Origin: Setoptus koraiensis
Lineage: Eukaryota > Animalia > Arthropoda
Length of the DNA: 64,000 nt
Assembly: GCA_048013815.1 (NCBI GenBank)
Contig: CM106586.1
Location: forward strand, 806,001 to 870,000
Reading direction: 5' to 3'
The number at the start of each line of letters is the position of its first letter. The first letter of the stretch is position 1. The notes below the pieces were generated by a model. The model was not told the DNA's origin and searched no databases. It worked only from the letters and a program-made list of their open reading frames with translations. The translations under genes were made by a program, and so were the position numbers. Positions 29,810 to 61,610 of this stretch are shown here, one piece after another.

Positions 29810-31448
29810 GGTTATAGTCCCGAAGAGCGCCACACTTTTTTCGGGGTATTTTGGGTATTTTTGGGTAGGGTATTGTACCCTGATACCGCGATGGGTATTC
29901 CGGAAGTGCGGAATTTCTTGGTACCCGAGATAACCGGGGTGTTCTTTCGATTAGGTCCCCACTCAGAATTCGATGAAACTTCACACACAGGCCCCGCAGG
30001 GGCCCCACATCATGGATTATGTGGTCCGGAAGTGCGGAAACTTCCGGTTCCGGTTTTACAAAAAGTTGAAGCTAGAGCTCTGAAAATTCATAATCAGATA
30101 GGTGACCCCTAGCGGAGCACGATGAAATCAAAATAAATCTAATATCACTTCCGGTTAGCTAGATATCACGGTTAAACTGAAATTAGAGGTGCGGCCGGGC
30201 CTGTGCGGTGGCGGTGAGCGGGCCCATACTGTGCACAGACTGCGCATCACCATGTATTAGCTTGTAATTCAATTGTTCTTACTTGTCTCATCCTTATTTT
30301 TCATTCCCCCGCTTTGTTTGTGGATGGATTGCAGTCATGTGAGCGGAGGGTAGAGGGCGCAGCCCGATACCCGAAGCGCTCATCAACCCTACCCGTAGGG
30401 TTCCCGTCGCACGCAGTTGTCGCGGGAGCGACGACGGAGATGTGACGGCCTCCAGAATACGAGGCCGCAGGCCGAGTTCTCAGACCCACCGCATGTTCAT
30501 CTTCTCCGAGCGCAGCGAAGCAATAATTTGGTCACTTCCGGTCTTCAAACCCCGCAAATATGACCATATCTTGAAAACCGGAACTCGCACAGATCTGAAA
30601 ATTATTCCATCGTGTTGAGAGTAGCCTGAAATGTCATTCCAGTGAATTTCAGAGCTCTAGCTTCAACTTTTTGTGAAATCGGAACCGGAAGTTTCATCAA
30701 GATCTGAGTGGGGACCTAATCGAAAGAACAACCGATAACCGAGGTAACGCTCTATGGGCGTTTCGTGATACCCGACAGCCGCTTGGGGATTTGCAGGTAT
30801 TTTTTCGGGGTAATTTTTGGTACCTCGATGAAGTAGCGTCCAATACAGCAAGGAATAGTAGAAATAGACCTTAGTTTCGCTCTGATTGTGATGGTTCCAA
30901 GAACCGGAGGCCGTCACATCTCCGTCGTCGCTCTCGCGACGACTCCGTGCGACGGGAACCCTTCGGGTAGGGTTGATGAGCGCTCCGGGTATCGGGCTAC
31001 GCCCTCTACCCTCCGCTCACGTGACTGCAATCCATACCCTGTCAGAAGAGATGATCAGACTACGAACTGTGAAGCCCAAGATTTCACAGCATCCCATCGA
31101 ATGCGCAGGCTTCAGATTTAACAGTTCATCAATCAGCGTAATTCCGACCGATTGCGCAAGTATAGCTTCTGGCAGTTCGTCTGATGACGGTATTCCATCG
31201 AACAAAGACCCGTTCGCTGAACTCGCTAAGATTATGCGCATAGAATAGCAAGCAAGAGGTGAAAACCAACAAAAACGGCCCTTATCAGGGCAACCCCAAC
31301 CTTTAACAACTTTCTCTTGGTTTTTCCCAGTAATCTCGAGAACCGCGCGTCCAACATGGCTGAAATTGATGGCGTTGTGCTCAACATGTATGAATCTACC
31401 AGTGTACCGAGTTTTGAGTCTGTATCTCAAAGTTTTATTAAAACCGGG
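29810..31448 (-). mobile_element. MITE family A copy (same subfamily as 381-1338) with a nested copy
   Basis: GGTTATAGTCCCGAAGAGCGCC terminus; 30742-31445 is the reverse complement of 480-1230; core partly deleted. Confidence 0.85.
29937..30733 (+). mobile_element. Nested MITE family A copy, core ~30324-30480
   Basis: TIRs GGGTGTTCTTTCGATTAGGTCCC / GGGACCTAATCGAAAGAACAACC; TSD GATAACCG. Confidence 0.92.
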
Positions 31449-32045
31449 GGTGTTGTAGCGAATAGTGACCCAGTCAGATTTCGATGAAACTTCACACATA
31501 GGGCCCGTAGGGCCCCCCGACAACAGTTTGAGTGGTCCGGAAGTGCGGAAACTTCCGGTTCCGGTTTTACAAAAAAAGAGAGCTACGGCAATGAAACTCA
31601 GTCGACTGATTGATAAGAGCATGCTGATCATGCTGAACTCGTTCTTTAGTCTCTGCGACTTCCGGTTCGGGAGATATCGAGGGAATTTTGGAGATAGGAG
31701 CGTTTCTGCTTCGTGCGCTTGCACAGAACTTAATCTGGGTGCTGTAGCGAACTGGGCGTAGCTCAGATCGCGACGAAACTCACGGTGTGTGTACCTTAAG
31801 GGGCCCTGATGAAGATTTGTTTAGACCGGAAGTGTAGAAACTACAGGTTCCGGTTTTAGCTTAATCTTCGAGCTACAGTCTTGAAAGTCGGTATGTAGGT
31901 GGATTTGATCACGATGATTCCGATGACATCAACTTCTGATTCTTACAACTTCCGGTTCACAAGATATTCGGTGATAACCGCTGCAAGGGCGGCGACAGGA
32001 CGGAATGTCGACCAAATACGTGCGCTAGCAGGCCCGTTCAGATCA
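31449..32045 (+). mobile_element. Two further MITE arms (starts 31449 and ~31737) running into a gap
   Basis: GGGTGTTGTAGCGAATAG and GGGTGCTGTAGCGAACTG termini with CCGGAAGT motifs. Confidence 0.7.
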
Positions 32046-32545
32046 NNNNNNNNNNNNNNNNNNNNNNNNNNNNNNNNNNNNNNNNNNNNNNNNNNNNNNN
32101 NNNNNNNNNNNNNNNNNNNNNNNNNNNNNNNNNNNNNNNNNNNNNNNNNNNNNNNNNNNNNNNNNNNNNNNNNNNNNNNNNNNNNNNNNNNNNNNNNNNN
32201 NNNNNNNNNNNNNNNNNNNNNNNNNNNNNNNNNNNNNNNNNNNNNNNNNNNNNNNNNNNNNNNNNNNNNNNNNNNNNNNNNNNNNNNNNNNNNNNNNNNN
32301 NNNNNNNNNNNNNNNNNNNNNNNNNNNNNNNNNNNNNNNNNNNNNNNNNNNNNNNNNNNNNNNNNNNNNNNNNNNNNNNNNNNNNNNNNNNNNNNNNNNN
32401 NNNNNNNNNNNNNNNNNNNNNNNNNNNNNNNNNNNNNNNNNNNNNNNNNNNNNNNNNNNNNNNNNNNNNNNNNNNNNNNNNNNNNNNNNNNNNNNNNNNN
32501 NNNNNNNNNNNNNNNNNNNNNNNNNNNNNNNNNNNNNNNNNNNNN
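32046..32545. other. Assembly gap (500 N)
   Basis: Run of N. Confidence 1.
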
Positions 32546-32606
32546 ACTGAGGTAATTCTAAAACTGCATTTAAATACAGATCAACCTGTAAATTTAAGCA
32601 ATAAAC

Positions 32607-32939
32607 ATGGCTCAAAACCGGGACTCTCATTCGGACGAATGGGAGTATATCCAAAACGGAGAATCTTATGGAAGATCACTAGAAGAAGATTTTATGCGTA
32701 TTGCAGATATAGAGGACCGCCATCAGCGCCCACCCATAGCTTATGGAGAATGGGAAATAGAACCCATTATTGGTCATTGTGTGACCGAGAATGGGATGAT
32801 ATTTTATCAAGTAAGATGGCGACCTGTCGGACAATGGGCTGACACATGGGTGTTAGCAGAGTGCGTAATCTCTCACCGCTTAGTGAGAGAATACTTTGAG
32901 AGAAGAGTTTCAGAATTGGGGGCAGTACAACGTAACTGA
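32607..32939 (+). CDS. Intact stand-alone chromodomain protein (110 aa; copy D, no polyQ)
   Basis: ATG start; YGEWEIEPIIGHCVTENGMIFYQVRWRPVGQWADTWVLAECVISHRLVREYFERR. Confidence 0.75.
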   Translation: MAQNRDSHSDEWEYIQNGESYGRSLEEDFMRIADIEDRHQRPPIAYGEWEIEPIIGHCVTENGMIFYQVRWRPVGQWADTWVLAECVISHRLVREYFERRVSELGAVQRN

Positions 32940-33329
32940 TCGTGCTGTACAGGTGAGTGGGAGTATTGGACTCCAAACCTGCGCAGTGCGATCAGTGCGC
33001 TCTACAAAAAGTATAAAATGCGCTGCATCAGTAGGTGCAGCACTCAGATGAAAATATGTATTCAACATAAAATAAACTATATATAAAATACTATATATCG
33101 CGCTGCCTTTATTTCTATTAGTCGGTTATCGCCGTTCTTTTTCCAACGGTCTCCCGATCCTCTTTCTCTCCTGGAGGATCGTTTGTCGTTTGGGCCACTC
33201 TTCGACCTGTTACGATTATTCTTACGCGAGCTAGAACCGTGATCGTCTTGTTTCACCGCATTCACGGATCTGTCGACGAGACTTCACGCGTGCCTCACCG
33301 TTCTCGACGCTGTTTGCAACGCGGATTAG

Positions 33330-34185
33330 GGTTGTTCTAGCGATTAGGTCCCAGCGCCGATTATGATGAAACTTCCGGTACAGGTTCATCTTGACCCAAA
33401 ACCATCAGGAAAAGTGGTCTGGAAGTGCGGAAACTTCCGGTTCCGGTTTTACATTAAGTTGCTTCTAGAGAGTTGAAACTCACCAGAATGACGTTCTAGA
33501 TGACGATTAACACGATGACATAAGTTTCAGCTCTCTACCACTTCCGGTTCTCTGGTTATAGCGATATCTCGAGGGTTGAGAGACCGGAAATTGCAGAATT
33601 CATGCTTCGCTACACTCAGGGATGAGCCTGAAATTGTTCGTAGAACTCGGCCTGCGGCCTCGTATTCTGGAGGCCGTCACATCTCCGTCGTCGTTCCCGC
33701 GACGACTGCGTGCGACGGGAACCCTTCGGGTAGGGTTGATGAGCGCTTCGGGTATCGGGCTGCGCCCTCTACCCTCCGCTCACATGACTGCAATCCATCG
33801 ACAAACAAAGGGGGGGAATGAGGAATAAGGATGAGACAAGTAGGAACACCCGAATTACAAGCTGATACATGGTTATGCGCAGTCTGTGCACAGTATGGGC
33901 CCGCTTACCGCAACCGCACAGGCCCGGCCGCACCTCTAATTTCAGTTGAACCTTGATATCTAGCAAACCGGAAGTGATACCGGATTGATTTTGATTTCAT
34001 CGTGCTCCGCTGAAGGTCATCTACCTGATTCTCAATTTTCAGAGCTTTAGCTCAAACTTTATGTAAAACCGGAACCAGAAGTTTCCGCATTTCCGGACTA
34101 CCTAATCCATGATGTGGGGCCCCTGCAGGGCCCGTGTGTCAAGTTTCGTGATGATCGGCGCTGGGACCTAATCGCAAGAACACCC
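33330..34185 (-). mobile_element. MITE family A copy (856 bp) without matching TSD; chimeric arms
   Basis: Both TIRs present; core ~33645-33800; flanks CGGATTAG vs CAACTATT differ. Confidence 0.85.
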
Positions 34186-34324
34186 CAACTATTCGTTTTA
34201 ACACTGACTCTTGGTAATATTTGTTTGTTTTCAACTGATGGTTGTGAGCTGTTCGTGTTCAAATCTGAAATGACAAAATTATCGTGAACAAGTGGTCTGC
34301 TCATCACAAATGGGCGACCAAGTG

Positions 34325-34710
34325 TTCGGTTAATTACAGTTGGAGGTAACCAGAGAGGTGACCTTCTTCGAGTATCACAGCCAACAGTATCAAGATGTGT
34401 CTAGAGAGTATCATACGCCCTTGCAAGTCTGCCCGCCCATTATCTGCAGTTTCCATCAAATGATGAACAAGATGCAATCAAGGAGAATATCTACGCAATA
34501 GATAGATTTCCCGGTGTAATTGGTGACTTAGATTGCACTCACATACCATTTTCGACTATCAGCGAGAGGAACCGCGAAAGATTCCGAAATAGGGAGAACA
34601 GCATCAATGTTCAAGCAGTTGTAGATGCTGAGACCAACATTGTAGCTCGTTGGCCTGGGTCAACACATGATGCCAGAATATTCGACAATAGTCGAATTAG
34701 GATGCAATTT
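34325..34710 (+). pseudogene. PIF/Harbinger (HARBI1-like) DDE nuclease fragment
   Basis: VSQPTVSRCV..FPGVIGDLDCTHIP..SINVQAVVDA..ARWPGSTHDARIF motifs. Confidence 0.9.
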
Positions 34711-35985
34711 TCGGGTAGGGTATTGTGCTCTGAGACTCCGCTCACATGACTGCAATCCAAACACAGCTGAAGGCGGGAAGAGTGAGCGAACCACCCAACA
34801 GAGAATGAGAAAGAATGGATTAAATGACTGAAACAGACGTGAATACAGAGTGCAGCGAGCACGAGGCACAGAATGGGTCCGCTGACCGCGACCGCACAGG
34901 CCCGGCCTCACCCCTAAATTTGGTTTAACCTCTGTATCTTATGGACCGGAAGTTAAAGCGGATTAGTTTTGATCTCATCATGCTCCGCTAGGTGGCAACA
35001 ATCTGATTCCGAAGTTTCGAAGCTCTATCTCAATATTTTAGCATATCCGGAACCGGAAGTTTCCGCACTTCCGGACTACTCAATTCATAGTACAGGGCCC
35101 CTGCGGGGCTCGTGTGTCAAGTTTCATGATGATCGGCGCTGGGACCTAATCGCAACAACACCCGGAAATTCTTCGTTCCCGAGTTACCCGAGGTACCGCA
35201 TTGTGGGTATTTTAGGGTATTTGGAGGCATATTGACGATACAATCGATCGTACCCACCCAAACGGACATCGGTTAGGGTACCAACATCTTTATACCGAAG
35301 GTAGATTGCACCTAGAAGCTCTAGAAGTCGAGTAAAAGCAGTCGAACTGAAGAGGCGTGACCGATGCGCGCGGCGCGGAGTGAAACTGCACCCGCAGTTA
35401 GTCAGACTCCACACCGAGTCCTAGCGCGTGCACTATTACTTTTTGCTACCAGTTGCGCGTGCTTATTCATGTGTGGACCAGATTCACGTACAGCACACGA
35501 TCAGGGATATTTCCCCCAACTTTTGGGATTTGACCACCGGAAATGAGTACCACAGTCGAGCAGGTTGGGCGCGGGCCGGAGGAGGGGTTCGGCCTCCAGT
35601 CGTCCACGCCTACGGCCTGCGGCCTCCGGCGGGACGACTGACGGCCACCTAACTAAAAAAGATTCTTCCCGAAGAATGGGAGTCGAGTGGGCGGGGCCCG
35701 TGATCGGGCCGGGTTTCTTTCATATATGGTGTGAACCCGCTTTAAAGACCGTAACTAGGTGGTAGTACAGCCGAATCGCGTCAGTTTGCAAACCGGAAGT
35801 GTGACTTGCACTTATTGTCAAATCGCCAACGAGTTGATGTAAGAGATTTATCTCAACGCTATCACATAGATAGCATCTGGATCTAGACAATCATACAAAA
35901 ATCTAAGGTCTGGGGCCCCTCAGAGGCCCAAAAAATGCATATCTCCGGAAGTAGAAATTTCCGCACTTCCGGACCACTATATTTG
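34711..35985. mobile_element. Partial family A copy (to 35164) inserted in a family B copy (35165-35985)
   Basis: 35165-35985 is near-identical to 28815-29630; family A terminus at 35164. Confidence 0.8.
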
Positions 35986-36846
35986 GGTTGTTCTAGCGAA
36001 TAGTGCCACACCCAGATTCTGATGACACTTCCGGTATAGGTTCATCTTGACCTCAATAGAACGAAAAAAGTGGTCCGGAAGTGCGGAAACTTCTGGTTCC
36101 GGTTTTACCTCAAGTTAGAGCTAGAGGTCTAAAACTCACCATAATAGCGTTCCAAAAGACGCTAAACACGTTGGCATAATTATTAGCTGGGTGTGACTTC
36201 CGGTTCTCGAAATATCGGCATATTTATTGGTTCAGAAGACCGAACCAATGACGAATTTCAGCTTCGCTGCACTCGGGGATGTACCTGCGATGGGTCTGAG
36301 AACTCGGCCTGCGGCCTCGTAATTTGGAGGCCGTCACATCTCCGTCGTCGCTCCCGCGACGACTGCGTGCGACGAGAACCCTTCGGGTAGGGTTGATGAG
36401 CGCTTCGGGTATCGGGCTACGCCCTCTACCCTCCGCTCACGTGACTGCAATCCATGGAAAATTCTTGGTTGAAGAAATGCGACGATAGAAACTGAATTCA
36501 TCACAATGATGCGTATCATCAAGAATCGGAGAGATACCGGGATGAATTGGCGCACGTATGTTCTCGTGCGCGCGGATGCTTCGTTCCGAGGTGAATACCC
36601 ACGCGGTTTTTCCTGAATATCTCTTGAACCGGAAGCCGCACACAGATGAAACGAACTCCGTTGTACTCAGCACGTCCGCATCCTGCTGCTCATCAAGTTT
36701 CATGGCTCTAGCTTGAAGTTTGTGTAAAACCGGAACCGGAAGTTTCCGCACTCCCGGACTAGCGAATCCGTTGTTTGGGGGCCTTTCGGGGCCCATGTGT
36801 GAAGTTTGGTTGAAATCTGAGTGTGGCACTATTCGCTAGAACACCC
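35986..36846 (-). mobile_element. MITE family A copy (861 bp), core ~36300-36455, no matching TSD
   Basis: Both TIRs present; similar to the reverse of 12587-13458. Confidence 0.87.
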
Positions 36847-37065
36847 ATACTTTTCACACCTGTCGAATTGTCAATTTTTCACTGTCAATCGTGCGTATAG
36901 CGCGCTTTTGATGTAATTTGAAGCACGTACGCAACTTTGTTCATAGATGCAGATGCGTGTAGTTAAACAAAGCATGCATAATTATGCAAATTATGATTTC
37001 ATTACGCATCACCTGCCAGGTGGAGTCTTCATAGTTGCTGTGATAGCCGTTAGGGTCGTTGCTGC

Positions 37066-37160
37066 TGTGGATATTTATGCTGTGGATATCTATGCTGTGG
37101 ATATCTATGCTGTGGATATATATGCTGTGAATATTTTTGCTGTGGATATATATGCTGCTA
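37066..37160. repeat. 15-bp minisatellite (TGCTGTGGATATCTA)x~6
   Basis: Direct reading. Confidence 0.9.
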
Positions 37161-37189
37161 TGTAATGATAAGTTGTGCTATGTGATGAT

Positions 37190-40214: not shown

Positions 40215-42508
40215 TTTTTGGCGCTTAATTTTAATCAAGCTGCTATTGATGTGGTTCGGATGGATACGTTTATTCACGTGACTGTGTAATCCTATGGAGG
40301 TTTGACTTAGTCAAATTTGTGAGAATCCTGCTAGACATAACACATGTATTACTATGTAGATTCGACTTGGTCTATTATCGCTTCACTCGAAAATATTTTG
40401 TATGCAATCCTATGGAGATTTGACTAGGTCACATTTGTGCGGAGTTCGGTGGTGACAAATCGAACTTCAAAATTGAAAATTCGAATTTCTTATAAGAATT
40501 TCATCTGCTCGTTCGATGTTCGATGGTCAGAGTTCGATGTTCGATAGTCACAATTCGACGGTTACAATTCGAACTTCGAAATTCGAAAATTGAAAATTTG
40601 AATTCCCAATGATATTTTCAGCTGCATTGTCGGAGTTCGATGGTCAGAGTTCGATGTTCGATGGTCATAGTTCGATCGTCATAATTCGAACTTCGAAATT
40701 CGAACTCCTAATGAGAGTTTCAGATGCTTGTTCTATGTTCGATGGTCAGAGTTCCGTGGTCAGAGCTCGATGGTCACAATTCGAAGTTCGAAATTCGAAA
40801 ATTGAAAATTCGAATTCCCAATGATAGTTTCAGCTGCATTGTCGGAGTTCGATGGTCAGAGTTCGATGTTCGATGGTCATAGTTCGATCGTCATAATTCG
40901 AACTTCGAACTTCGAATTTCGAAATTCGAAAATTGAAAATTTGAATTCCCAATGATAGTTTCATCTGCTCGTTCGATGTTCGATGGTCACAATTCGATGG
41001 TCACAATTCGAACTTCGAACTTCGAAATTCTAAATTGAAAATTCGGATTTCTGATAAGAGTTACAGCTGCTCGTTCGATGTTCGATGGTCAGGGTTCCGT
41101 GGTCAGAGTTCCGTGGTCAGAGTTCCGTGGTCAGAGCTCGATGGCCACAATTCGAAGTTCGAAATTCGAAAATTGAAAATTCGAATTCCTAATGATAGTT
41201 TCGTCGGTTGTTGTAGCGAATAGCGACCCGCCCCGATTTTGGTGAAACTTCCGGTACGGGTACTTCTTGACCCCAATAGACCGGAAAAGTTGGTCCGAAA
41301 GTGCGGAAACTTCCGGTTCCGGTTTTACATAAAGTTAAAGATAGAGCTCCGAAATTCACCAGAGAGACGTTTCAAGCTACGCTGAACACGATGAAATAAT
41401 ATTCAGCTCTCTGCAACTTCCGGTTGTCTAGAAATAGAGATATTACAAGGGTTTGAAGACCGGAAGTGACCGAATTATTGCTTCGCTGCGCTCGGGGATG
41501 AACATGCGATGGGTCTGAAAACTCGGCCTGCGGCCTCGTATTCTGGAGGCCGTCACATCTCCGTCGTCGCTCACGCGACGACTGCGTGCGACGGGAACCC
41601 TTCGGGTAGGGTTGATGAGCGCTTCGGGTATCGGGCTGCGCCCTCTACCCTCCGCTCAGGTGACTGCAATCCACACAGGAATGAAGGTGAAAGAACGAAC
41701 TGGAGACATGTTTTTGGCACAGAAAAAAGGCTGTGCCAGCTTGTGTGATAAATTGCATGAGCCTCTGAGCGCACGAATTCATTCAGGCGCGCGGATAGTT
41801 CGTCCCGTCGACGCCCTCTCAGCAGTTTTAACCAAATATCTCGTGAACCGGAAGTCGTACAGACTTGAAATAGACATGATCGTATTCCGCATGCACAGTT
41901 TCAGTTATCTAGTGAGTTTCAAATCTGTATCTCAATGTTTTTGTAAAACCGGAACCGGAAGTTTCCGCACTTTCGGACCACTCAAACTGTTGTCAGGGGG
42001 CCCCACGGGCCCGATGTGTAAAGTTTCATCGAAATCTGACTGGGTCGCTATTCGCTACAACACCCGTTTCGTCTGCTCGTTCGATGTTCGATGGTCACAA
42101 TTCGAAGTTCGAAATTCGAAAATTGAAAATTCGAATTCCTAATGATAGTTTCGTCTGCTCGTTCGATGTTCGATGGTCACAATTCGAACTTCGAAATTCA
42201 AAATTTATGCACTATAACAAAGTGTGCGCCATTGACTAATTGGTGTGTCTAACTTGATTACTCATTGCGGCGAAACTGACTATTAGAATCTTACTAAATT
42301 CCATACGCAAGCAATCGACATGTGTATCATGCTGCGATAGAAATTGGGAGAACTTGTATTCATTCTGTCATCTTTTCGGCTACTCTGATCGACAGGCATA
42401 GATGATTATCTCCGACATGTTGTCACATACTCGCATCCATATTCCAACGATACTCGTCTATCCAAAAAATTAAGCGCTCGAGGTACTGATAGAATCAGAA
42501 TCACTTGT
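40215..42508 (+). mobile_element. Full-length HINE with TTCGAA satellite and a nested MITE
   Basis: 5' TTTTTGGCGCTTAATTTTAATCAAG; 3' AAAAATTAAGCGCT plus hairpin plus ACTTGT. Confidence 0.87.
41206..42065 (-). mobile_element. Complete MITE family A copy (860 bp), core ~41520-41675
   Basis: TIRs GGTTGTTGTAGCGAATAGCGACCC / GGGTCGCTATTCGCTACAACACCC; TSD GTTTCGTC. Confidence 0.93.
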
Positions 42509-44934: not shown

Positions 44935-46800
44935 TTTTAGCGCTTAATTTCAATTAAGTTGCTGTTCGTGTGGTGATGATGGATACGTTTATTCACGTGA
45001 GTAGAACAAATCAGTGCAATTTTCGGGTGTTCTTTCGAATAGCGCCTCACTTTGATTTGGATGAAACTTCACACACAGAACCCGTAGGACCCCTTGACAA
45101 TGCTCTGAGTAGTCCGGAAGTGCGGAAACTTCCGGTTCCGGTTTTAGCTTCATCTTCGAGATACAGTCCAGAAACTCGGTATGTTACTAAATCAGACTAC
45201 GATAACCCCGATGACATCATTGAAAACAATCTCTACAACTTCCGGTTCTCGAGATATTCAGGTAAATTGCATGTATGGGCGAATCTAGGCCGGTCTGGGT
45301 CTAATCAGAGCCAAAATCTTACACCCAGAGCAGGGTGACACGCATTCATGAACAAAACCCGGCTCGATCACGGGCCCCGCCCACTTGACTCCCAGTCCTC
45401 GGGAAGAATCTTTTTTAGTTAGTTGGCCGTCAGTCGTCCCGCCGGAGGCCGCAGGCCGTAGGCGTGGACGACTGGAGGCCGAACCCATTCTCCGGTTCGG
45501 GCCCAAGCTGCATGTCAGACGGAAGGGCTCTTATATATTGAACATGGGTGAGCATGGGCACCCCGGGTATCCCGTGCTACCTGCGACGGTCATGCCGCAC
45601 TCATCCGGTTGTGATTATCACCCTTGCGTAGCCTAATACACACTCGGATACCCGAAATACCCGGGTACAACCTGGTATCGCTCCTCGGGTTCATTTTCAC
45701 ACATCTGGTATACAATTTCTGAGTTCAGAAAGCTTGACTGTACCTTGCTGTCGCAAAATTATCTTCAAAAAAAGCAGTGGGAACCACTAGCGGTCGTCGG
45801 ATATCTCAGAACGCCCACTGTGCGGTACCTCGATTATCTCGGGAACGGAGAATTTCCGCACTTCCGGAGTATCCATCGTGATATCGGAGTACAATGCCCT
45901 ACCCTAAAATACCCAAAATACGCCGATAAAAGTGTGGCGCTATTCGAAAGAACAACCCGATTTTCTATCTAGGGAAAATTAGCACAAGGAAGGCATCGGG
46001 AAGCATCTGGTGGGTTTCATCGTTCTAAATTTACCTAGTTTGTTAGTACAGTGGAAGCTAGGAGGCGGAGTCATTGGAAAACAATTATACAGTGGAAGCT
46101 GAGGTGCTTACTAGACAAAATTAGAAGCAAGAATGCTAGCTGTTTACAAATTGGAATTAGCACTAGGGAAGCTAGAAAGGCGAAAACTGGGTAGATTTAG
46201 TACAATAGAACGCTTAAATGTTGGTTTATTAAATTTAAGACAGGAACAGCTAGGAGGCGGAATCACTAGGAAACAATGAAACAGAGAAGACTGAGATGCA
46301 AACTAGGTGGATCTAGCAAAGTAGAAGGCTAGCTGTTGACAATTAGGATCTAGCGCACGGGAAGTTAGTAGTCATGAAACTAGGAAATCACAGTACAGTA
46401 GAAGCTACTCAAGTTGACAAGTGTCTCGCAGCACAATTTATCCTGTGATTGGTCGAACTAGGTGAAAGTGACGAACTTGGAGCTGGGATGCCCACTAGAA
46501 TGATTTAGCAGAGCAGAGGGCTACTGATTAATTAAGATCAAGTGCACGAGGATCGAGTAACAGCTAGCTTACATTATTGGGTCGTAATCAGCACTGTGAA
46601 AGGCACATAACTCAGTCATGCAGCACAGTCAAAGGCACGCAAAAATTTGAACAGCGTCATAGCTGAGAATTGAACAGTTCTCAGCTATGACAAACACAAT
46701 TAATATTGTCAAAGGCACTATAACTGTGCTGTACTGTGTGGAAACTGAAGATGCACATGCTCTCAGCTATGACATGCACAATTAGCACAGTCAAAGGCTA
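44935..46800 (+). mobile_element. HINE 5' part with degenerate AGCAC/GAAGCT repeats and a nested MITE
   Basis: TTTTTAGCGCTTAATTTCAATTAAG terminus; body resembles 19200-19700. Confidence 0.65.
45025..45957 (+). mobile_element. MITE family B variant (933 bp)
   Basis: TIRs GGGTGTTCTTTCGAATAGCGCC / GGCGCTATTCGAAAGAACAACC; TSD CAATTTTC/CGATTTTC (7/8). Confidence 0.88.
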
Positions 46801-47925: not shown

Positions 47926-48435
47926 GGTTGTTCTAGCGATTAAGTCCCCAACCGGATCTTGATGAAACTTCAGGTATAGGTCTATTTTGACCTAACTAAG
48001 ACGGAAAAAGTGGTCCGAAAGCCAGGAAACTTCCGGTTCCGGTTTTACATAAAGTTGAAGCTAGAGCTCTAAAATTCACCAGAGAGAGATTTTAAGCTAC
48101 GCTCAACACGTTGACATAATTTACAGCTCCGTGCGACTTCCGGTTCGCCAGATATAGGGATAATACAGGGGTCAGAAAACCGGAAGTGACCAAATTATTG
48201 CTCCGCTGCGCTCGGGGATGAACATGCGGGAGGTCTGAGAACTCGGCCTGGGGCCTCGTAATCTGGAGGCCGTCACATCTCCGTCGTCGCTCCCGCGACG
48301 ACTGCGTGCGACGGGAACCCTTCGGGTAGGGTTGATGAGCGCTTCGGATATCGGGCTGCGCCCTCTACCCTCCGCTCACATGACTGCAATCCAAACACAG
48401 CAGGCGGGAAGAGTGAACGAACCAACCAACAGAGA
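47926..48435 (-). mobile_element. MITE family A copy (left arm plus core ~48240-48395), truncated by a HINE
   Basis: GGTTGTTCTAGCGATTAAGTCCC terminus. Confidence 0.85.
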
Positions 48436-49497
48436 ACAAGTAATACTGATCAAATCAGTATTTAGAGCGCTTAATTTTTCATGTAGACGATTATCGTTGA
48501 TAATTAGGAGGAGTTTATGAAGACCTATTAGCGCTCGCAATCGATGAATTGATGCATACTTGGTAGCCAAGAGTACGAGAGATCTCAGCTATACCACTAT
48601 GTGCTCGTGTGCGGTATGCTATCCAAATTAATCGTTTGGTCGTTTCATACCATCTAAAGAGTATAACAAACTAGATCCAGGTTTCTCAAATTCTCACCAT
48701 AGTTAGATGTACATGTCTGCTGCCTGCATGCAAAAATTGGTGCACTTCTATCGGTTAGTTTTGCCACAATTAATGATTTCAATACATACACCAAGAAGCA
48801 ATGGCGTACTATGTGTTGAAGCGCGCGCTTCATGTGCGGTGTGCTATTCAAATTGATCGTTTGGTCGTTTCATACCATCTAAAGAGTATCACAAACTAGA
48901 TCCAGGTTTCTCAAATTCTCACCATAGTTAGATGTACATGTCTGCTGCCTGCATGCAAAAATTGGTGCACTTCTATCGGTTAGTTTTGCCACAATTGATG
49001 ATTTCAATACATACACCAGGACGCAAAGGCGCACTATGTGAATTCATCTAGTTAGCATCGCAGCATTGAGCGTGTTACTCTCGTCTAGTTTCATCTACAT
49101 CAGAATCAACAGTGCTGAGAAGCAGTAGTCATTCTGAGTAGCTTCTACTGTTATACAATCTTCTAGTTCTAACGCCTCTAGCTTCCAGTGCACTGAATCC
49201 GAATTGTATACAGCTAGCCTTTTGCTGTGCTAAATTCATCTAGTTAGCATCTCAGCATTGAGCGTGCTAATCGCGTCTAGTAGGTGGACGCGCATAGCAT
49301 TCTATGTGCTAAATTCAATTAATCAACATTGTAAGCTTTGAGTGTTCTAAATTTATCTAGTTTATTTCTCACAGTACAGCTTTCACCGTGCTATTTTTTC
49401 CTAGTTGAAAAAAGCACTGATTTGTTCTACCCACGTGAATAAACGTAGAGCCCAGAACCATCCCAATAGCTGCTTAATTAAAATTAAGCGCTAAAAA
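48436..49497 (-). mobile_element. Full-length HINE with an internal ~225-bp tandem duplication
   Basis: 3' ACAAGTAATACTGATCAAATCAGTATT plus AGCGCTTAATT; 5' TTAATTAAAATTAAGCGCTAAAAA; duplication 48625-49040. Confidence 0.85.
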
Positions 49498-49519
49498 GAA
49501 ACAAGCGGAAACCTAGAGA

Positions 49520-49910
49520 CATATCTCAAATTTTATTATCACACCAATTCGTTGATATTCAGGGTTAAAATGACCGAAACAGAAATCGATACAGGGTGTT
49601 GCGCGCACGTGGCACAGGATGGGTCCGCTCATCGCGACCGCACAGGGCCCGGCCACATCCTTTTTGGCGTTAAACAGTCATATCTAGGTAACCGGAGGTG
49701 GCAGAGGATTAATTTTGATTTCATCGTGCTCCGCTAGGCGTCATCTATTCGATTATGAATTTTCAAAGCTCATTCTCAATCTTTTGGTAACTCCGGAACC
49801 AGAGGTTTCCTGGCTTCCGGTCTACTCATTACATGAGATGGAGCCCCTATGAGGCCCATGTGTGAAGTTTCATCGAACTCTGAGTGGGGACTTAATCGCA
49901 AGAACACCCG
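49520..49910. mobile_element. MITE family A arm fragment
   Basis: Ends GGGACTTAATCGCAAGAACACCC. Confidence 0.7.
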
Positions 49911-50017
49911 ATTAATTGACTGTAAAAGGATTTTCAATTTCGGAGTTCAAATTGTCACCACCGAACCCCTCACAAATTTGACCTAGTCAAACCTCCATAG
50001 TATTACATGGTCACGTG

Positions 50018-50888
50018 GGGTGTTGTAGCGATTAGTGCCCCAGTCAGATTTCAATGAAACTTCACACACGAAGCCTGCAGGATCCACAAATGATAACCTT
50101 GGTGGTCCGGGAGTGTGGAAACTTCCGGTTCCGGTTTTACTTAAAAATTGAGATACGGACTTGAAAATCTCTATAATTATCGATCTAAAGATGCATAGGA
50201 AGATACAGCTAATTTTAAGACTGAAAAACTTCCGATTCACGAGACATTGGGTGGGAACCCCTGCAAGGCGGTGACGGGACTGAATATCGACCTATATGTG
50301 CGCTAGAAGAACCCGTACTGTCCACCACAAAATTCCGCGCCTCTTCCGTTCCTCGAGATTCTCACACTTGGATGTCCAGGTTCACGGTGAACAGTCCGTT
50401 CCTCTACTTACGGTCGTGTATGGATTGCAGTCATGTGAGCGAAGGGTAGAGGGCGCAGCCCGATACCCGAAGCGCTCATCAACCCTACCCGAAGGGTTCC
50501 CGTCGCACGCAGTCGTCGCGGGAGCGACGACGGAGATGTGACGGCCTCCAGATTACGAGGCCCCAGGCCGAGTTCCCAGACCCATCGCCTACTCATTTCT
50601 GAGCAAATCGAAGCTCTAATTGCCACTTCCGGTCTTCTGACGTCAAATAAATCGCTACATCTGGAAAACCGGAAGTCGAACAGAGCTAAAGATTATGCCA
50701 TCGTGTTCATCGTTGTCAGTAACGTCTCTCTGGTAATTTTCAGGCCTCTAGCTCAAACTTCATATAACACCGGAACCGGAAGTTTCCGCACTCCCGGACC
50801 AACTTTTCCAGTCTATTTGGGTCAAGATGTACCCGTACCGGAAGTTTCATCAATATCGGGGCGGGGCACTAATCGCTACAACAACCAA
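50018..50888 (+). mobile_element. MITE family A copy, core ~50420-50575
   Basis: TIRs GGGTGTTGTAGCGATTAGTGCCCC / GGGGCACTAATCGCTACAACAACC; no matching TSD. Confidence 0.87.
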
Positions 50889-52090: not shown

Positions 52091-52092
52091 TT

Positions 52093-54783: not shown

Positions 54784-54930
54784 AACAACGAACAAGTATC
54801 GAACGTCGCTTGTCCGATTGTTCTCTCTCTTTCTCTGCCATTTGTGTCTCCCTATTTTGGCAAGCCAGCCAATAAGCTACGGCTAAGCTTGTCTATGTGT
54901 GTGCGTTTGTAAAGTAAACTTGTGCCTTTC

Positions 54931-54932
<2 letters not shown>

Positions 54933-54966
<34 letters not shown>
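54933..54966. repeat. (GA)17 microsatellite
   Basis: Direct reading. Confidence 0.95.
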
Positions 54967-54971
<5 letters not shown>

Positions 54972-55907: not shown

Positions 55908-57690
55908 ATTGCCAAGTAATGGCGCACAAACGGACCAACAACAACAAGCGGCTAGCTTGCCAAATATTCAAACAGGAAATCAACAACAGCAACAGCCCAA
56001 CAATGGAAACAACCAAAAGATGGCAGCACTGGCACAAAAATATCAGATACACTCTTTGCAGTCGTTGCAAAAACGTGATTCAAGCTTCTCAAAATTGGCC
56101 ACTTGTTTTGAGGCTCAACTTACCATATTGGAGCCAGAATTAACTGATCAACGAGACTATCAATTGATTGTTCAAAATGAACGCGGTCAACAATCGGCAA
56201 TAATACGAATGAGAGTATCATCTCCATTGTCGCCAATACTCATGTTAAGCTCGGCATTTATGACAATATTTGCATTGTTTGTCTGCTCCCTAGTGGCCAT
56301 GTTTGTAATTAGAAAGCGAAAGAAGCAACAGGAACAATTGGACGAACAAGATGCAACCAATAGCAATACTAACATCAATACAAACAACGGAAATGGAGTA
56401 TTGAGCCAGGAAAACATAAACACCTCACTAGCGTCCGCTAATGGCAAACAAAATGGAAAACTAGGTGGTGCCGATGCTTTATTGGGTGGTCAACAGTTGG
56501 ACAGTGTTGTAAGCCGACGTTCTAGACATGATAGCTCAACTATGGGATCCAATAGTAATAGTACAAGCCAATCTACAGCCAATTCAACGCCGTCTCCGCA
56601 ATCGTCGCCCCCTCTAACGGGAAACACTGGCATTATGAGTGGTAACCAAAATAAAACAGGAAGTGCGGCGTTGCGTCATCATCTTACATCGGCCTTAACT
56701 GGTGCAACAAACAATGTTAACTCAAATAATAGTTCTACTTATCAAGCAGCCGAATCAATTAATTTGTCGTTACATTCACAATTAGCAGATCATCATCATC
56801 ATCATATTAATCAATTGCATCATTTTCAGTCAGCGAACAAGTCATCGTTAGAGCAGCAGCAACAACAACAACATTCTACTGAACATTCCACTGAACAACA
56901 ACAACAGCAACAGCAGCAACAACAACAACCGGTGCAACGCAGTAGCACCACCAGCTCACAAGAGGGTCTCATATATGCAAATTTAGATTTCCACGATCAT
57001 CAGGATCCTTCAATGATTCATGTTGGTCAACAGCATCAACATCGTCAAATGGCGTCGCCTCAAAGTTACACAGATAGCGGTTCTATGGTGAGTCAACAGC
57101 ATCAACAGTCGATTCTTTTGGATGGTAACTCAGACAATGGTTTAGCATTGCATAATAATCATAGTCATCATCATTCGCAAGTGATCTCTTATAATGGTCT
57201 ATCAGTGGCAACACCATCTTATATGATGCAAGATCATTCGCCCAATACAAACAACACAAAAAATATTGCACAACAACAAACAAATGCACCTAGCTCTGTC
57301 GGCGCTACAGTGGCTATGATGAATAGTCAAATTCAGCAACAACAACAGGTATCTAGCGGAAGTGTTAACGGGGTCAATCAACAACAACAGTCAACGACAC
57401 CAGTAAGGAAACCTGGACCTCCTAAGCCACCCAAGCCCATTATTCACCAGAGGAGCAAATTTTATGGTCAAGTGGCGGCCGCTGGCGGTTTAAGCGAGGG
57501 TCTGATCATGAAAGTCCAACAGCAGCAACAACAAAACAACAATCAATCTGGAAACAGTATGACAATAACGGAACAACAAGCATCAAATGGCGCTCTATAT
57601 AATCAAAGTTCAAAGGATAACAGTCTGGCCAATAATGAAATGTCTATAGAATATGCCAGAATAGCATTTCCTGCCAGCGCCGAGCTCTAG
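55908..57690 (+). CDS. Fas3: Terminal coding exon of a host Ig-superfamily adhesion protein, Fasciclin-3-like
   Basis: Acceptor-like CTTACTCACCTAAAG just upstream; CFEAQLTILEPELTDQRDYQLIVQNERG (end of membrane-proximal Ig domain), TM helix, RKRKK stop-transfer, GLIYANLDF and EYARI tyrosine motifs, RKPGPPKPPKP. Confidence 0.72.
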
Positions 57691-58619
57691 ATAACAAGAA
57701 ACATTTATGCATTGAGCTCAGAGACGAAATTTAGACTATCGACACTAAATTGAGGCATGCAGTCTCAATTGAATCAATATCTGTAACGTTTGTATGGCAT
57801 CCGCTTAAACAATGGCCTCCTAATCAAACAATCCAGTCAGCAATTCAAAGACTAATTGTTGTGTGATGTTGACCAATCGTCATTTTGCTGCTCCACTCGT
57901 GTTAATCACCCCCAAAACATCTGACTAATTGATATATCGTTAACTGTCTCTTAATAAAAGCAACAACAATGATTCAGTGGCGACAGCAATACGACTTGAT
58001 ACAATTAATAGCTGGCACTGCTGTAATCTGATGAATGATGAATTTTATCTCAACATTTATGTCTACATGTGTGTAAATAGTTGATGAAATAGGAAGGAAG
58101 AGTAGAAGAAGAACAAAGAAAGAGAGACGGAGCAAGATGTAAATATTCTATATTATTATAAATATATTATATTATTACTAATGTCTATTACTATTATTAT
58201 TATTGTGTTTGTTGTTGCCTGCCTTGATAATCCATCTTATCATCATTGTTTAAGTATATTACACAGTAGAGGATGTTTTAAAAGCATTTCGTCCCCGTAA
58301 CAACAAAAAATCGCACTGATTCTAGTGTGTCACTTCATAGAAACAGATCTGAGTGAAAATAAAATGCAACGTTAGAATTCGATTAATTTTTCTTGTTGAT
58401 TTAGTTTCTGAAGTTAATTATCTCGAAAAGATGGTGTTGCTTCATTTCATAAGGAAATGTCCCTAACGTCGTGCCGGACTCGCAAAGCTATACAGCAGCC
58501 AACTGCCGTGACTCTAATCGAATAAAATAGTTGATAAAGACTCTGTTCCTTCCATTCCGAAAGGACCTCTTCCATATGAAGGCTCGAAAATCAAACGTGT
58601 TTTAGATCAAATTTTTGGG

Positions 58620-59644
58620 TGTTCCATCGAACAGTGACCCACTCCGATTTTCTTCAAACTCAACACAGGGGCCCTGGAGGGGCCCCGAAGTACAAATAAA
58701 GTGGTCCGGAAGTGCAGAAATTCTTACTTACGGAGATATGGAAAAATGGGGTGCTGTTCGGAAAGACGACACACTCCGATTTCGATCAAACTCAACACAG
58801 GGGCCCCCAAGTACAAATATGACAGTCCGGAAGTGCGGAAATTTTTACTTCCGGAGATATCGAGAAATCCATTTTTTTTGTCTCACAGATGCTTTTTACC
58901 ATATATTTTGGTATAATCGCACAGTTTCCACTACGATGTACGTGATTTCATTAGATTAGATCATATTTGAGAACTTGATCTCGAGAAATTCACTGTTTCT
59001 TATCTAGTACTTCCGGTCCGAGATTCAATGTGAATAGAGTAATCTGTTTGGCGTAATTGACCATTCAGGCTTACAACTTGAACGCAAGGCCGAACAGAAC
59101 CCGGCCCGATCGCGGGCCCCGCCCACTCGACTCTCAGCCCACGGGAAACAATTCTTTCCCGGGATGCGGGACGGCCCGTAGGGCCGTCACGAGGCAGGCC
59201 GTCAATCGTTCCGCCGTCGGCCGAAGGCCGAGGGCGTGGACGGTAAGCCGGCCTATGCGGGTGGGCCAAAGGCCCACCCGCACATCGTGGCACCTCCTGA
59301 GGGGCGCAGCCCCGAAGTGCGTGCTCAGAATCCCCTCGATGATACGAAGAGCCTTCCTAAGTTAAATCACTTTTATTCTGCTCCTGTGGCTGCTAGGGAG
59401 AATCTACTTTCGGTGAATGACCATCAGCACCACACCGGATGTGAATGCGGGATGGCACCGCCGCCCGTACCCCAAATATGCCGAAAAATACCTTAAAATA
59501 CCCACAAGGCGGTACCTCGGGTATCTCGGGAACGAAGAATTTCCGCACTTCCGGAATACCCTTTCTTGTCTCAGGGCATCATACCCTACCCAAAAATACC
59601 CAAAATACCCAAATCGGGCTGGGTACGTGTCCCATACAATAACC
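58620..59644 (-). mobile_element. MITE arm fragment (58620-58748) plus family B variant (58749-59644)
   Basis: Termini GGGTGTTCCATCG, GGGTGCTGTTCGG and GTGTCCCATACAATAACC; core-2 hairpins at 59090-59290. Confidence 0.8.
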
Positions 59645-59891
59645 CAGTTTTGCTATGGCATATTAGAACTTCAGTAGCTCCATTAGGGAGCGGGTTTACA
59701 ATTTTAGACAATAAATATTTTAATTTATCTTCGGTACTAACTAATTTTATATCTGTTTTTATTCTTATCTTACTTCCATTTATTAATCTATCCTTTAGCC
59801 CCCAGCAAAAGAGTTTAGAGGCACATATGCGGATTCGAGCCTTCCTATTTATCGCTACCCTGAAGGACGGAGCAGACCAAGGCCTACTACC

Positions 59892-60654
59892 GTGCCTTCC
59901 GAACCGCCTGTGGCGCTGGAACATTATATTGAGGACCCTCGTCAGTACCCACGTCCTGGGTATCGCAATAACTTTCAAGTCATGGTCAGAAGCACTTTTG
60001 CTTATTTGTTCCCAGCAGCCGCAGCCGAATTCGGGTGTATGAACATTTTCAGATTTACACAGGATCAATTCTTTAGTGTACGACTAATTCACTTTGGCTA
60101 TGTTAGTTCCAGGTTGGCCCTCGAATCTCCGGATCCCATTGATCCAGATGCTCTCAAGCCGCCCCACAATATAACTTTGCCTATTACCGACGTGCCGATC
60201 AGTGACTATCCAATCCCCTATCGAGGAGAAGAGAGTCTTAATCGACAATGTAAGACTATCCAGGCCCTTATCAGAAGTTTTTATATGGACTCCGATTCTA
60301 GAGCACAGTATATTTGGAATAGATTTAGAATTAACACCGCCAACGATCATCGGGTTCTCGTTGAAGCTTATACTTCCAAAAATTATTCGATATCTAAGCA
60401 TAAGCCAGAATATTGTTTTATCGTCGATAGCCAATGGTTGGCCATCTATAATAGTAGATCTAAGAATGCCTTCATTTGGATGTGCAGCCCCACGGAGTGT
60501 TCCGATGGTAGGCCAGCTAAGATGCATCATGCTTCTAAACAGATGCGAGATGAGTATCTTATGGGAAAGCGTACCAGAATTATGACTGGACAGAGTGCTC
60601 GGCATAAGGACAAGCCTAATTCCAAACTTGCTCAGGCGGACCTGAAGAAAATTC
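59892..60654 (+). CDS. Hypothetical protein (>250 aa), family not recognised, interrupted by a MITE at 60655
   Basis: Long stop-free frame in unique sequence with complex composition. Confidence 0.5.
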
Positions 60655-60738
60655 GGGTGTTGTTCGGAACACGTACCAAGCCAGATTTCCTCCAAACTTC
60701 ACACATGAGCCTCAAAGAGGCCATAAAGAACAAATAAA

Positions 60739-61610
60739 GGTTGTTGTAGCGATTAGGTCCCAGCGCCGATCATGATGAAACTTCCGGTACAGGTTCATCT
60801 TGACCCAAAACCATCGGGAAAAGTGGTCCGGAAGTGCGGAAACTTCCGGTTCCGGTTTTACCTAAAGTTGCTTCTAGAGAGTTGAAACTCACCAGACTGA
60901 CGTATTAGATGACGATCAACACGATGACATAGCTTTCAGCACTTCACCACTTCCGGTTCTCTGGTTATAGCGATATCTCTAGAATTGAGAGACCAGAAGT
61001 TGCCGAATTCTGGCTTCGCTACACTCAGGGATGAGCCTGCAATTGTTCTTAGAACTCGGCCTGCGGCCTCGTATTCTTGAGCCCGTCACATCTCCGTCGT
61101 CGCTACCGCGACGACTGCGTGCGACGTAAACCCTTCGGGTAGGGTTGATGAGCGCTTCGGGTTTCGGGCTGCGCCCTCTACCCTCCGCTCACGTGACCGC
61201 AATCCACACACAGCTGCAGGCGGGAAGAGTGAACGAACCACCCAACAGAGAATGAGGAAGAAGGGATTAAATGACTGAAACATACGTGAATACAGAGGGC
61301 AGCGAGTACGAGGCACAGGATAGGTCCGCTGACCGCAACCGCACAGGCCCGGCCTCACCCCAAAATTTGGTTTAACCTCTATATCCTATGAACCGGAAAT
61401 TAAATCGGATTGATTTTGATCCCTTCATGCTCCGCTAGGTGTCCACCATCTGATTCTGAAGTTTCGAAGCTCTATCTCAAAATTTTTGCATCTCCGGAAC
61501 CGGAAGTTTCCGCACTTCCGGACTACTCAATTCATAATAAAGAGCCCCTGTGGGGTCTGTATGTCAAGTTTCATGATGATCGGCGCTGGGACCTAATCGC
61601 AACAACACCC
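60739..61610 (-). mobile_element. Complete MITE family A copy (872 bp), core ~61052-61205
   Basis: TIRs plus TSD CAAATAAA. Confidence 0.93.

What the first reader, a model, noticed from the sequence alone, without database searches (positions are those of the whole stretch)
29937..61610. MITE arms are interchangeable around the core (combinatorial left/right arm swapping)
Seen: left-arm type l1 (..GTGACCAAATTATTGCTTCGCTGCGCTCGG..) and type l2 (..CGCTACACTCAGGGATGAGCCTG..) pair with different right arms. 29937 is l1+r1 (TSD intact), 33330 is l2+r1 (no TSD), 60739 is l2+r2 (TSD intact), 47926 is l1+r2, and 41206 is l1+r3 (TSD intact). Copies 381, 27178 and 61709 use a third arm type (AAAATACCC-rich). 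The switch points coincide with the core. Inference: the core acts as a recombination or template-switching hub generating new arm combinations, and different combinations carry perfect TSDs, so they transposed in that form. TSD-less two-ended copies (33330, 35986, 50018) may be genomic recombinants that rearranged the DNA between them. This modular core-plus-arms system is the best candidate for an undescribed mechanism in the window.
Basis: partly seen in the sequence, partly recalled or inferred. Interest (0 to 1): 0.82.

Follow-up and report, generated by a model that had tools for sequence, protein, structure and literature searches.

The report
Arm-swapped mosaic miniature DNA transposons
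A very abundant family of small, gene-less jumping elements keeps an almost identical 155-base centre, while the stretches on either side have been exchanged between sub-families and the hybrids kept jumping; the pattern is real, but ordinary homology-guided DNA repair between related copies would produce it.

Summary
The window carries about 20 full or partial copies of one group of 800-960 bp non-coding TIR elements. They have GG termini and 8-bp TSDs (Merlin-like) and share a 154-158 bp central core that is 95% identical on average.

The flanking arms are far more diverged, and their relationships conflict. Copy A (29937-30733) has a D-like left arm and a B-like right arm. B has an F-like left arm and an A-like right arm. 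The trees reject each other, and the best breakpoints for A, B and H all fall inside the core.

A, D, F and G have perfect TSDs. A also lies inside a continuous host element, so it is not an assembly chimera and it transposed in mosaic form.

Three corrections apply:
- The arms are diverged homologues, not unrelated modules.
- The core is one of at least three conserved anchors where switches occur. The others are the 32-bp CCGGAAGT box and a GAAACTTC motif.
- TSD-less copies (B, C, E and also H) have matched, sub-family-specific ends. Their missing TSDs are better read as later rearrangements at element ends, unrelated to arm exchange.

Homology-dependent gene conversion or template switching explains the pattern, so no new mechanism is needed. 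This scan had already noted the ultra-conserved core on other DNA of this genome.

The parts
29937..30733 (-). Copy A (GGT end at 30733): core 30324-30481, D/H-like left arm 30482-30667, B/K-like right arm 30060-30323. Perfect TSD GATAACCG. Nested in family-2 copy F2b.
33330..34185 (+). Copy B: F-like left end and left arm (33330-33640), core 33641-33798, A/K-like right arm 33799-~34135, F-like last ~45 bp. No TSD.
35986..36846 (+). Copy C (core 36298-36455): same arm types as G. No TSD. Its left flank is host repeat P, cut at the octamer where F sits in another P copy.
41206..42065 (+). Copy D (core 41517-41674): E-like left end, A/H-like left arm, C/G/E-clade right arm. Perfect TSD GTTTCGTC.
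47926..49909 (+). Copy H (core 48237-48393): l1 left arm, F-like proximal right arm, and a ~1.15-kb nested insertion at 48444-~49589. Matched ATTAAGTCCC ends. No TSD.
50018..50886 (-). Copy E (core 50420-50577): arm types of its own. No TSD. Its GGG end cuts repeat T at ..CACGTG.
60739..61610 (+). Copy F (core 61050-61207): l2 left arm and r2 right arm. Perfect TSD CAAATAAA, inside host repeat P.
12587..13458 (-). Copy G (core 12990-13147): sister of C in both arms. Perfect TSD GAAGAAAC.
2421..2953 (+). Copy J (core 2732-2889): D-like (92%). Right arm interrupted at 2954 by the same kind of insertion as in H.
21314..21793 (+). Copy K: right half only, starting inside the core. Its right arm is 95% identical to B's and it has the same alpha2-type end, so the B-type right half exists at a second locus.
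34736..35163 (+). Fragment R: last 24 bp of the core plus an F-type right arm and end, lying inside the AAAATACCC-rich end module of another element.
381..1338 (-). Family-2 copy F2a (core 906-1062): AAAATACCC-rich GGT end. Perfect TSD AAACATTC.
29810..31447 (+). Family-2 copy F2b (core 30906-31035, with a 21-bp deletion): host of A. Right end cut by element S at 31448.
62154..63113 (-). Family-2 copy F2c (core 62672-62828): perfect TSD CGAGTTCT. Inserted into the edge of N's core.
27178..28050 (-). Family-3 copy M (core 27488-27638): perfect TSD AACATTTC.
61709..63488 (-). Family-3 copy N (core 61997-62153), split by F2c. TSD GATTTTTG.
45025..45957 (-). Copy I: same kind of ends (AAATACCC-rich GGT end, standard GGG end) but no core. 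TSD matches at 7 of 8 positions.
32046..32545 (.). Assembly gap between element S (31448 onward) and the unique left flank of B. No element used here spans it.

Best explanation
This is a large, old and diversified group of non-autonomous cut-and-paste DNA transposons of Merlin type (GG termini, 8-bp TSD, no ORF).

A few blocks are held almost constant across all sub-families:
- the 23-bp termini;
- a 32-bp box with CCGGAAGT motifs about 95 nt from each end;
- a GAAACTTC motif;
- a hairpin-rich 154-158 bp central core.

The sequence between these blocks (the 'arms') has drifted to 45-75% identity.

Because the constant blocks are the only long tracts of near-identity shared by different sub-families, homology-dependent exchange between copies starts and ends in them. 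The exchange could be gene conversion, template switching during repair of the double-strand gap left by excision, or ectopic recombination. The result is swapping of whole arm cassettes of about 250-400 bp, for example box-to-core or core-to-GAAACTTC motif. Recombinant elements keep intact ends and are mobilised again, which gives mosaic copies with perfect TSDs.

Shown here: the mosaic pattern, the breakpoints at conserved blocks, and transposition of mosaic forms.

Inferred: the repair pathway, and that the constant blocks are kept by selection for mobilisation.

TSD-less copies are a separate phenomenon. They reflect rearrangements or deletions that begin exactly at element ends in a region dense with elements.
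For: Element definition:
- Eight perfect 8-bp TSDs and one 7/8 match.
- GG termini, with one end GGT and the other GGG in every copy.
- No transposase among window ORFs of 180 aa or more.

Core conservation:
- Core identity is 95.3% on average and 95.5% between families. Of 154 columns, 124 are invariant and 19 differ only in single copies.
- Arms are 45-75% identical between types.
- Residual homology continues beyond both core edges.

Incongruence:
- The right arm splits {A,B,K,F,H} from {C,G,D,E} with 100/99 support. It rejects {A,D} (p-AU 3e-53) and {A,H,D} (1.3e-4).
- The left arm rejects the right-arm split {A,H,B,F} (p-AU 0.022).
- A quartet of TSD-bearing copies only (A, D, F, G) gives 7:2 on the left against 2:32 on the right, Fisher p 3.6e-5.

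Breakpoints (alignment columns; core = ~319-471):
- A at cols 369-372, B at 316-344, H at 429-458, all inside or at the edge of the core, permutation p <= 0.001. Control C/G is not significant.
- Further switches at the box (cols 69-124) and at cols 843-857.

A is not an assembly chimera. Its flanks are contiguous family-2 sequence around the TSD.

The B-type right half is present at a second locus, K.

Core word depth in public runs is about 10 times that of any arm.

A 62-bp deletion between 12-bp direct repeats in A shows slippage or template-switch type repair acting on these elements.
Against: - Only about 10 family-1 copies could be analysed, because the window is the only sequence available.
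- Left-arm support for the A+D+H+J group is moderate (77/85), and the left-arm AU tests are only p~0.02. The groups were named after the identities had been seen.
- Breakpoints cannot be placed more finely than the core, because the core has almost no informative sites. 'In the core' is therefore partly forced.
- No autonomous partner or transposase is in the window, so the Merlin assignment rests on TSD and termini plus unchecked notes from this scan.
- Two of the four combinations in the l1/l2 x r1/r2 table (B and H) lack TSDs.
- Long-read validation was not possible. Only short Logan contigs were served.
Confidence: 0.68

Rival explanations
1. One reading: the core is a dedicated recombination or template-switching hub. 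For example, its dense hairpins stall repair synthesis and force the nascent strand to re-anneal on the core of another copy, or a recombinase acts on it. Arm shuffling would then be promoted beyond what sequence identity alone allows.
For: - All three central switches fall in the core.
- The core folds better than shuffles as single-stranded DNA on both strands (z -2.18 and -3.92).
- The core is less diverged than the arms even within one family: 96.8% against 92.3-92.9% for F2a vs F2c. Ongoing conversion at the core would produce this.
- Two unrelated truncated pieces start at the same core position, 11623 and 34736.
Against: - Switches also occur at the box and at the GAAACTTC motif.
- The core is simply the longest near-identical tract, so it is the expected crossover place under plain homology.
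- No fixed crossover point can be shown.
- No recombinase was found in the window.
Confidence: 0.12
2. The exchange did not occur between miniature copies. The sub-families are independent internal-deletion derivatives of several autonomous elements that were themselves mosaic or differently diverged, so the combinations are inherited from the parents.
For: - Unchecked notes from this scan place the same core downstream of a Merlin transposase gene in full-length elements.
- Terminal variants differ between sub-families and are matched at both ends of each copy, as expected if several transposase lineages exist.
Against: - All family-1 sub-families have the same length, the same spacing of CCGGAAGT islands and alignable arms throughout. 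This points to one founding deletion derivative, not many.
- The conflict between left-arm and right-arm trees still requires recombination somewhere.
Confidence: 0.1
3. Assembly artefact: the assembler jumped between copies through the identical core. This would create false arm combinations and copies without TSDs.
For: - The core is present in the order of a thousand-fold single-copy word depth.
- The scaffold has three gaps in 64 kb.
- B and H, the two combinations that complete the four-gamete table, lack TSDs.
Against: - A, D, F and G have perfect TSDs. A and F also sit in host repeats that continue correctly on both sides. Incongruence is significant with these four copies alone.
- Both ends of B, C, E and H carry the same rare sub-family variants.
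- An independent run holds a contig across B's left junction.
Confidence: 0.05

Closest known systems
Non-autonomous (MITE-like) elements of the Merlin superfamily of DNA transposons
   Same: Terminal 5'-GG, 8-bp TSDs, TIRs within the 24-462 bp range given for Merlin (PMC8101967), no coding capacity and high copy number.
   Different: At 800-960 bp they are larger than typical MITEs. They carry a central block conserved far better than the TIRs. The link to a DDE_Tnp_IS1595 transposase was not testable in this window.
SINE superfamilies with a highly conserved central domain (CORE-, V-, Deu-SINEs) and their 'mosaic evolution'
   Same: A central domain of unknown function is kept across lineages whose flanking modules differ and are exchanged by recombination (PMC11481361, citing Zietkiewicz and Labuda 1996).
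   Different: SINEs are Pol III-transcribed retroposons with LINE-derived tails. They have no TIRs and no fixed 8-bp TSD, and their exchange is thought to occur at the RNA/cDNA level.
Abortive gap repair with template switching after excision of cut-and-paste elements (P element, Ac/Ds, Mutator; from my own knowledge of that literature)
   Same: It produces internally deleted and chimeric elements with joints at short or long homologies, and the elements keep intact ends and remain mobile. The 62-bp deletion between 12-bp repeats in A has this signature.
   Different: In those systems it was shown experimentally. Here it is inferred from sequence only, and ectopic homologous recombination would give the same products.
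Alternative transposition / hybrid-element insertion and element-mediated adjacent deletions (P, Ac/Ds, bacterial IS; own knowledge)
   Same: Intact two-ended elements without TSDs, whose host sequence is cut exactly at the element terminus, as at C and E.
   Different: The partner breakpoints were not found in the window. Ectopic recombination between same-type copies, or misassembly, cannot be told apart from it here.

Membership tests
Merlin superfamily (non-autonomous member) | 8- or 9-bp target site duplication | tested here: met
   Perfect 8-bp TSDs at A, D, F, G, F2a, F2c, M and N, and a 7/8 match at I. The criterion is taken from PMC8101967.
Merlin superfamily (non-autonomous member) | TIRs of 24-462 bp with conserved terminal 5'-GG | tested here: met
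   All 27 termini start with GG(G/T)T. The ends match at 39-45 of 52 terminal positions in family 1. Degenerate inverted symmetry extends to ~220 bp, with CCGGAAGT islands ~104 and ~211 nt from both ends.
Merlin superfamily (non-autonomous member) | Mobilised by a DDE_Tnp_IS1595 transposase encoded by a full-length element with the same ends | not testable with these tools
   None of the ten window ORFs of 180 aa or more that were scanned against Pfam is a transposase of this kind. Notes from this scan report such elements elsewhere in the genome, but I could not read that DNA.
hAT superfamily (alternative with 8-bp TSD) | Short TIRs of the hAT type and a hAT transposase partner | tested here: inconclusive
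   The TSD length fits. The termini begin GGG/GGT, unlike the hAT consensus as I recall it (own knowledge). No transposase is available to test.
MITE in the strict sense | Short (usually under ~800 bp), non-coding, TIR plus TSD, high copy number | tested here: met
   Length is 797-960 bp, at the upper limit. There are only short ORFs without homologues. Word depth is 50-300 times single copy for the arms and about 1000-3000 times for the core (this is not a strict copy count).
HCD/CORE-type SINE | Pol III promoter head and LINE-derived or A-rich tail, with no TIRs | tested here: not met
   TIRs and fixed 8-bp TSDs are present. There are no tRNA, 5S or 7SL matches in Rfam.
Site-specific recombination module (res/att-like core) | Fixed crossover point and a cognate recombinase | tested here: inconclusive
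   Breaks can only be placed somewhere within the 154-bp core. No recombinase is in the window. Switches also occur at other conserved blocks.

The most novel reading that the evidence does not exclude
The hairpin-dense core is more than a conserved tract. It would be an evolved cis element that both helps mobilisation and actively provokes strand dissociation and re-annealing (copy choice) during gap repair. Under this reading, the whole group of non-autonomous Merlin elements evolves as a cassette-exchange system around it, a DNA-transposon counterpart of the conserved-domain SINEs.
Probability: 0.12. Interest if true: 0.75.

Novelty: new variant of a known kind. Interest (0 to 1): 0.42.

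Why it matters
Recombination between transposon sub-families is well known for retroelements and SINEs. It is seldom documented for miniature cut-and-paste elements.

Here, exchange of whole arm cassettes between conserved anchors can be read directly from a single 64-kb window, and the mosaic products were clearly still mobile. This gives a concrete system for asking two questions:
- which internal parts of a non-autonomous DNA transposon are needed for spread (the anchors that never vary);
- how new sub-families arise.

In practical terms, consensus-based repeat libraries and copy-age estimates for this genome will be misleading unless the arms, core and ends are treated separately.

Tried and rejected
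- Rfam, at gathering thresholds on the whole window and at E<=1 on copy D, found nothing. The core is not a described RNA family.
- An ORF through the core has no protein relatives in the word-indexed search, so I could not fetch further copies that way.
- Exact scans for the core and the box found nothing in metagenome contigs or viral contigs.
- Public runs are served only as short Logan contigs. They gave relative abundance and some junctions, but could not validate whole copies or bridge the gap.
- Reciprocal-flank tests for deletion and inversion signatures among all 27 termini gave no pair beyond the elements' own TSDs. The one exception is explained by C and F using the same site of a host repeat.
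- I tried to decide which left/right combinations are 'native' from the complementarity of the inner arms. All combinations scored 48-69%, so this was uninformative.
- The shared variable sites inside the core show all four combinations, but one of them is a CpG site that also differs between the sister copies C and G. They cannot place the crossover.
- I considered that fast evolution of the B/F left arm alone could mimic the A+D grouping. I rejected this as a full explanation, because the left arm carries almost no signal (2 sites) for the split that 32 right-arm sites support.
Full report
WHAT IS THERE

The window is eukaryotic and repeat-rich, with three 500-N gaps.

A 32-bp box (GGAAGTGCGGAAACTTCCGGTTCCGGTTTTAC) occurs 20 times against 0 expected. 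A 23-bp terminal motif occurs 27 times against 0 expected.

The termini pair up into elements of 797-960 bp. In every element one end begins GGT and the other GGG, which gives each element an intrinsic orientation.

Perfect 8-bp TSDs flank A (29937-30733), D (41206-42065), F (60739-61610), G (12587-13458), F2a (381-1338), F2c (62154-63113), M (27178-28050) and N (61709-63488). Copy I (45025-45957) matches at 7 of 8 positions. B (33330-34185), C (35986-36846), E (50018-50886) and H (47926-49909) have no TSD.

None of the ten window ORFs of 180 aa or more scanned against Pfam is a transposase of this kind. The large ORFs belong to Ty3/gypsy-type elements.

ANATOMY (GGT end on the left; alignment)

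1. 23-bp terminus.
2. About 70 bp of subterminal sequence.
3. The 32-bp box.
4. Left arm, about 190 bp.
5. Core of 154-158 bp, alignment columns ~319-471.
6. Right arm, about 300 bp.
7. Box, subterminal sequence and terminus in inverted order.

The octamer CCGGAAGT occurs 83 times in the window against 1.2 expected. Within elements it lies at mirrored distances of about 104 and 211 nt from both ends. The arms are therefore long degenerate inverted repeats with conserved motif islands.

The core occurs 15 times in the window. It is shared by three families whose arms barely align: family 1, family 2 (F2a, F2b, F2c) and family 3 (M, N).

Core identity averages 95.3%, and 95.5% between families. 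Of 154 columns, 124 are invariant and 19 differ only in single copies. Arms of different types are 45-75% identical.

Weak but clear homology continues past both core edges in all families. The arms are diverged homologues and the core is the peak of a conservation profile.

The core folds better than shuffled sequence as single-stranded DNA on both strands, with z -2.18 and -3.92. It matches no Rfam family.

In public runs, core word depth is roughly 1000-3000 times that of single-copy flanks and about ten times that of any arm. This is a rough measure and not a copy count.

THE MOSAIC

| Region | Grouping | Source |
|---|---|---|
| Left arms | {A,H,D,J}, {B,F}, {C,G}, E | |
| Right arms | {A,B,K} and {F,H,R}, together forming one clade, against {C,G}, D/J and E | |
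| Termini | Follow the right-arm clades | |

The right-arm tree supports the split {A,B,K,F,H} | {C,G,D,E} at 100/99. It rejects {A,D} (p-AU 3e-53), {A,H,D} (1.3e-4) and {A,H,D,E} (2.4e-4).

The left arm rejects the right-arm split {A,H,B,F} (p-AU 0.022) and {A,B,F} (0.026). These groups were named after I had seen the identities, so the left-arm p values are only moderate evidence.

A quartet using only TSD-bearing copies (A, D, F, G) gives these informative sites:
- Left: AD|FG 7, AF|DG 2.
- Right: AD|FG 2, AF|DG 32.
- Fisher p 3.6e-5.

Maximum chi-square breakpoints, all with permutation p <= 0.001, are:
- A between cols 369 and 372;
- B between cols 316 and 344;
- H between cols 429 and 458.

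All three are inside or at the edge of the core. The control (C against G and D) shows no significant break.

Further switches lie at or next to the box: H at cols 69-72, and D at 85-93 or 121-124. Others lie at the GAAGTTTC motif: B and K at cols 853-857, and A at 842-844.

The exchanged units are therefore cassettes bounded by conserved anchors. The core is one anchor among at least three.

ARE THE MOSAICS REAL MOLECULES THAT MOVED?

- A lies inside family-2 copy F2b. Its TSD GATAACCG is F2b sequence, and F2b continues correctly on both sides. An assembly jump through the core could not produce that.
- F lies in host repeat P, with P continuing on both sides.
- The B-type right half (r1 arm plus alpha2-type end) recurs at a second locus, K, at 95% identity.
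- Contigs of another sample end exactly at A's two termini and continue into other flanks.

Mosaic forms therefore transposed.

Long-read validation of B, C, E and H was not possible.

ASSEMBLY GAPS

No analysed copy spans a gap. Element S (from 31448) runs into the first gap. Continuity across it is not shown, because depth is zero and no contig bridges it. One contig runs 84 nt into the gap from the right.

TSD-LESS COPIES

Both ends of B, C, E and H carry the same rare sub-family variant. They are not random joins of unlike copies. C has the same arm combination as the TSD-bearing G.

The flanks do show rearrangement:
- P is cut exactly at C's left end, and C's right flank is unrelated.
- Repeat T is cut exactly at E's end.
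- B lies between a Chromo-domain ORF and a DDE_Tnp_4 fragment.

No reciprocal flank pairs exist within the window.

Three causes all fit and cannot be separated here:
- ectopic recombination between same-type copies;
- transposase-mediated alternative transposition with adjacent deletion;
- misassembly.

MECHANISM

The simplest account is homology-dependent exchange that starts and ends in the only tracts still near-identical between sub-families, followed by renewed mobilisation. The exchange could be gene conversion, template switching during repair of excision gaps, or ectopic recombination.

The 62-bp deletion between two GAAACTTCCGGT repeats in A is the kind of product such repair leaves.

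The core is less diverged than the arms even within family 2: 96.8% against 92.3-92.9%. Either selection on source copies or ongoing conversion at the core would explain this. The hub idea is therefore not excluded, but it is not required.

COMPARISON WITH KNOWN ELEMENTS

TSD length, GG termini and TIR range fit Merlin as defined in PMC8101967. The transposase link was untestable here.

Unchecked notes from this scan report the same ultra-conserved core in Merlin elements elsewhere in this genome, and describe the genome as that of an eriophyoid mite. The core itself was thus found before on other DNA. The arm exchange is what this report adds.

The nearest conceptual parallel is the 'mosaic evolution' of SINEs with highly conserved central domains (PMC11481361).

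VERDICT

- Observation: confirmed.
- Interpretation: partly supported.
- Mechanism: ordinary.
- Interest: moderate.

Noticed in passing
35978-35985 and 60731-60738 / 61611-61618; host repeat P at 29427-29710, 35760-35985, and (reverse strand) 63640-63489 + 61708-61611 + 60738 downward: Copies C and F, of different sub-families and in opposite orientations, are inserted at the same octamer (TATATTTG / TTTATTTG) of two different copies of another repeat. This may be an insertion hot spot.
   Followed up: partly
2954 onward and 48444-~49589: A different element, starting CAAGTAATACTGATCAAATCAGTATTT, is inserted 45-55 bp to the right of the core in both J and H. In both it follows ..ACAGA(A/G)AA, although the two right arms are of different types.
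   Followed up: no
whole window, e.g. 41247, 41309, 41416, 41460, 41848, 41955 in copy D: The octamer CCGGAAGT (an ETS-site-like motif) occurs 83 times against 1.2 expected. It sits at mirrored positions about 104 and 211 nt from both element ends, even where the surrounding arm has diverged. These are likely subterminal protein-binding repeats.
   Followed up: partly
11623-11661 and 34736-35163: Two unrelated 5'-truncated pieces of F-type elements begin within 2 bp of the same position near the 3' end of the core.
   Followed up: no
both ends of every element, e.g. 47926-47950 / 49885-49909: The terminal 23-45 bp vary between sub-families but are always the same variant at the two ends of one element. 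In B, F and K a 16-bp subterminal stretch of one end is the inverted copy of the other end, which suggests concerted evolution of the two TIRs.
   Followed up: partly
32598-32936 (+) and 34405-34734 (+): A Chromo-domain ORF lies left of B and a PIF/Harbinger-type DDE_Tnp_4 transposase fragment lies right of it.
   Followed up: partly
62154-63113 within 61709-63488; 29937-30733 within 29810-31447; 31448: There is dense self-nesting. F2c sits in the edge of N's core, A sits in the end module of F2b, and S sits in F2b's box.
   Followed up: yes
10289-10662, 23388-24910, 40275-41205, 49930-50017: A TTCGAA-rich, internally repetitive repeat (called T here) has several copies. One remnant of 108 bp is squeezed between the facing GGG ends of H and E.
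   Followed up: no
34186-34321: A 537-nt contig from the run of a second organism matches only 34201-34321 and then departs from the window 15 bp short of B's right end. This may be a structural difference at B between samples.
   Followed up: no
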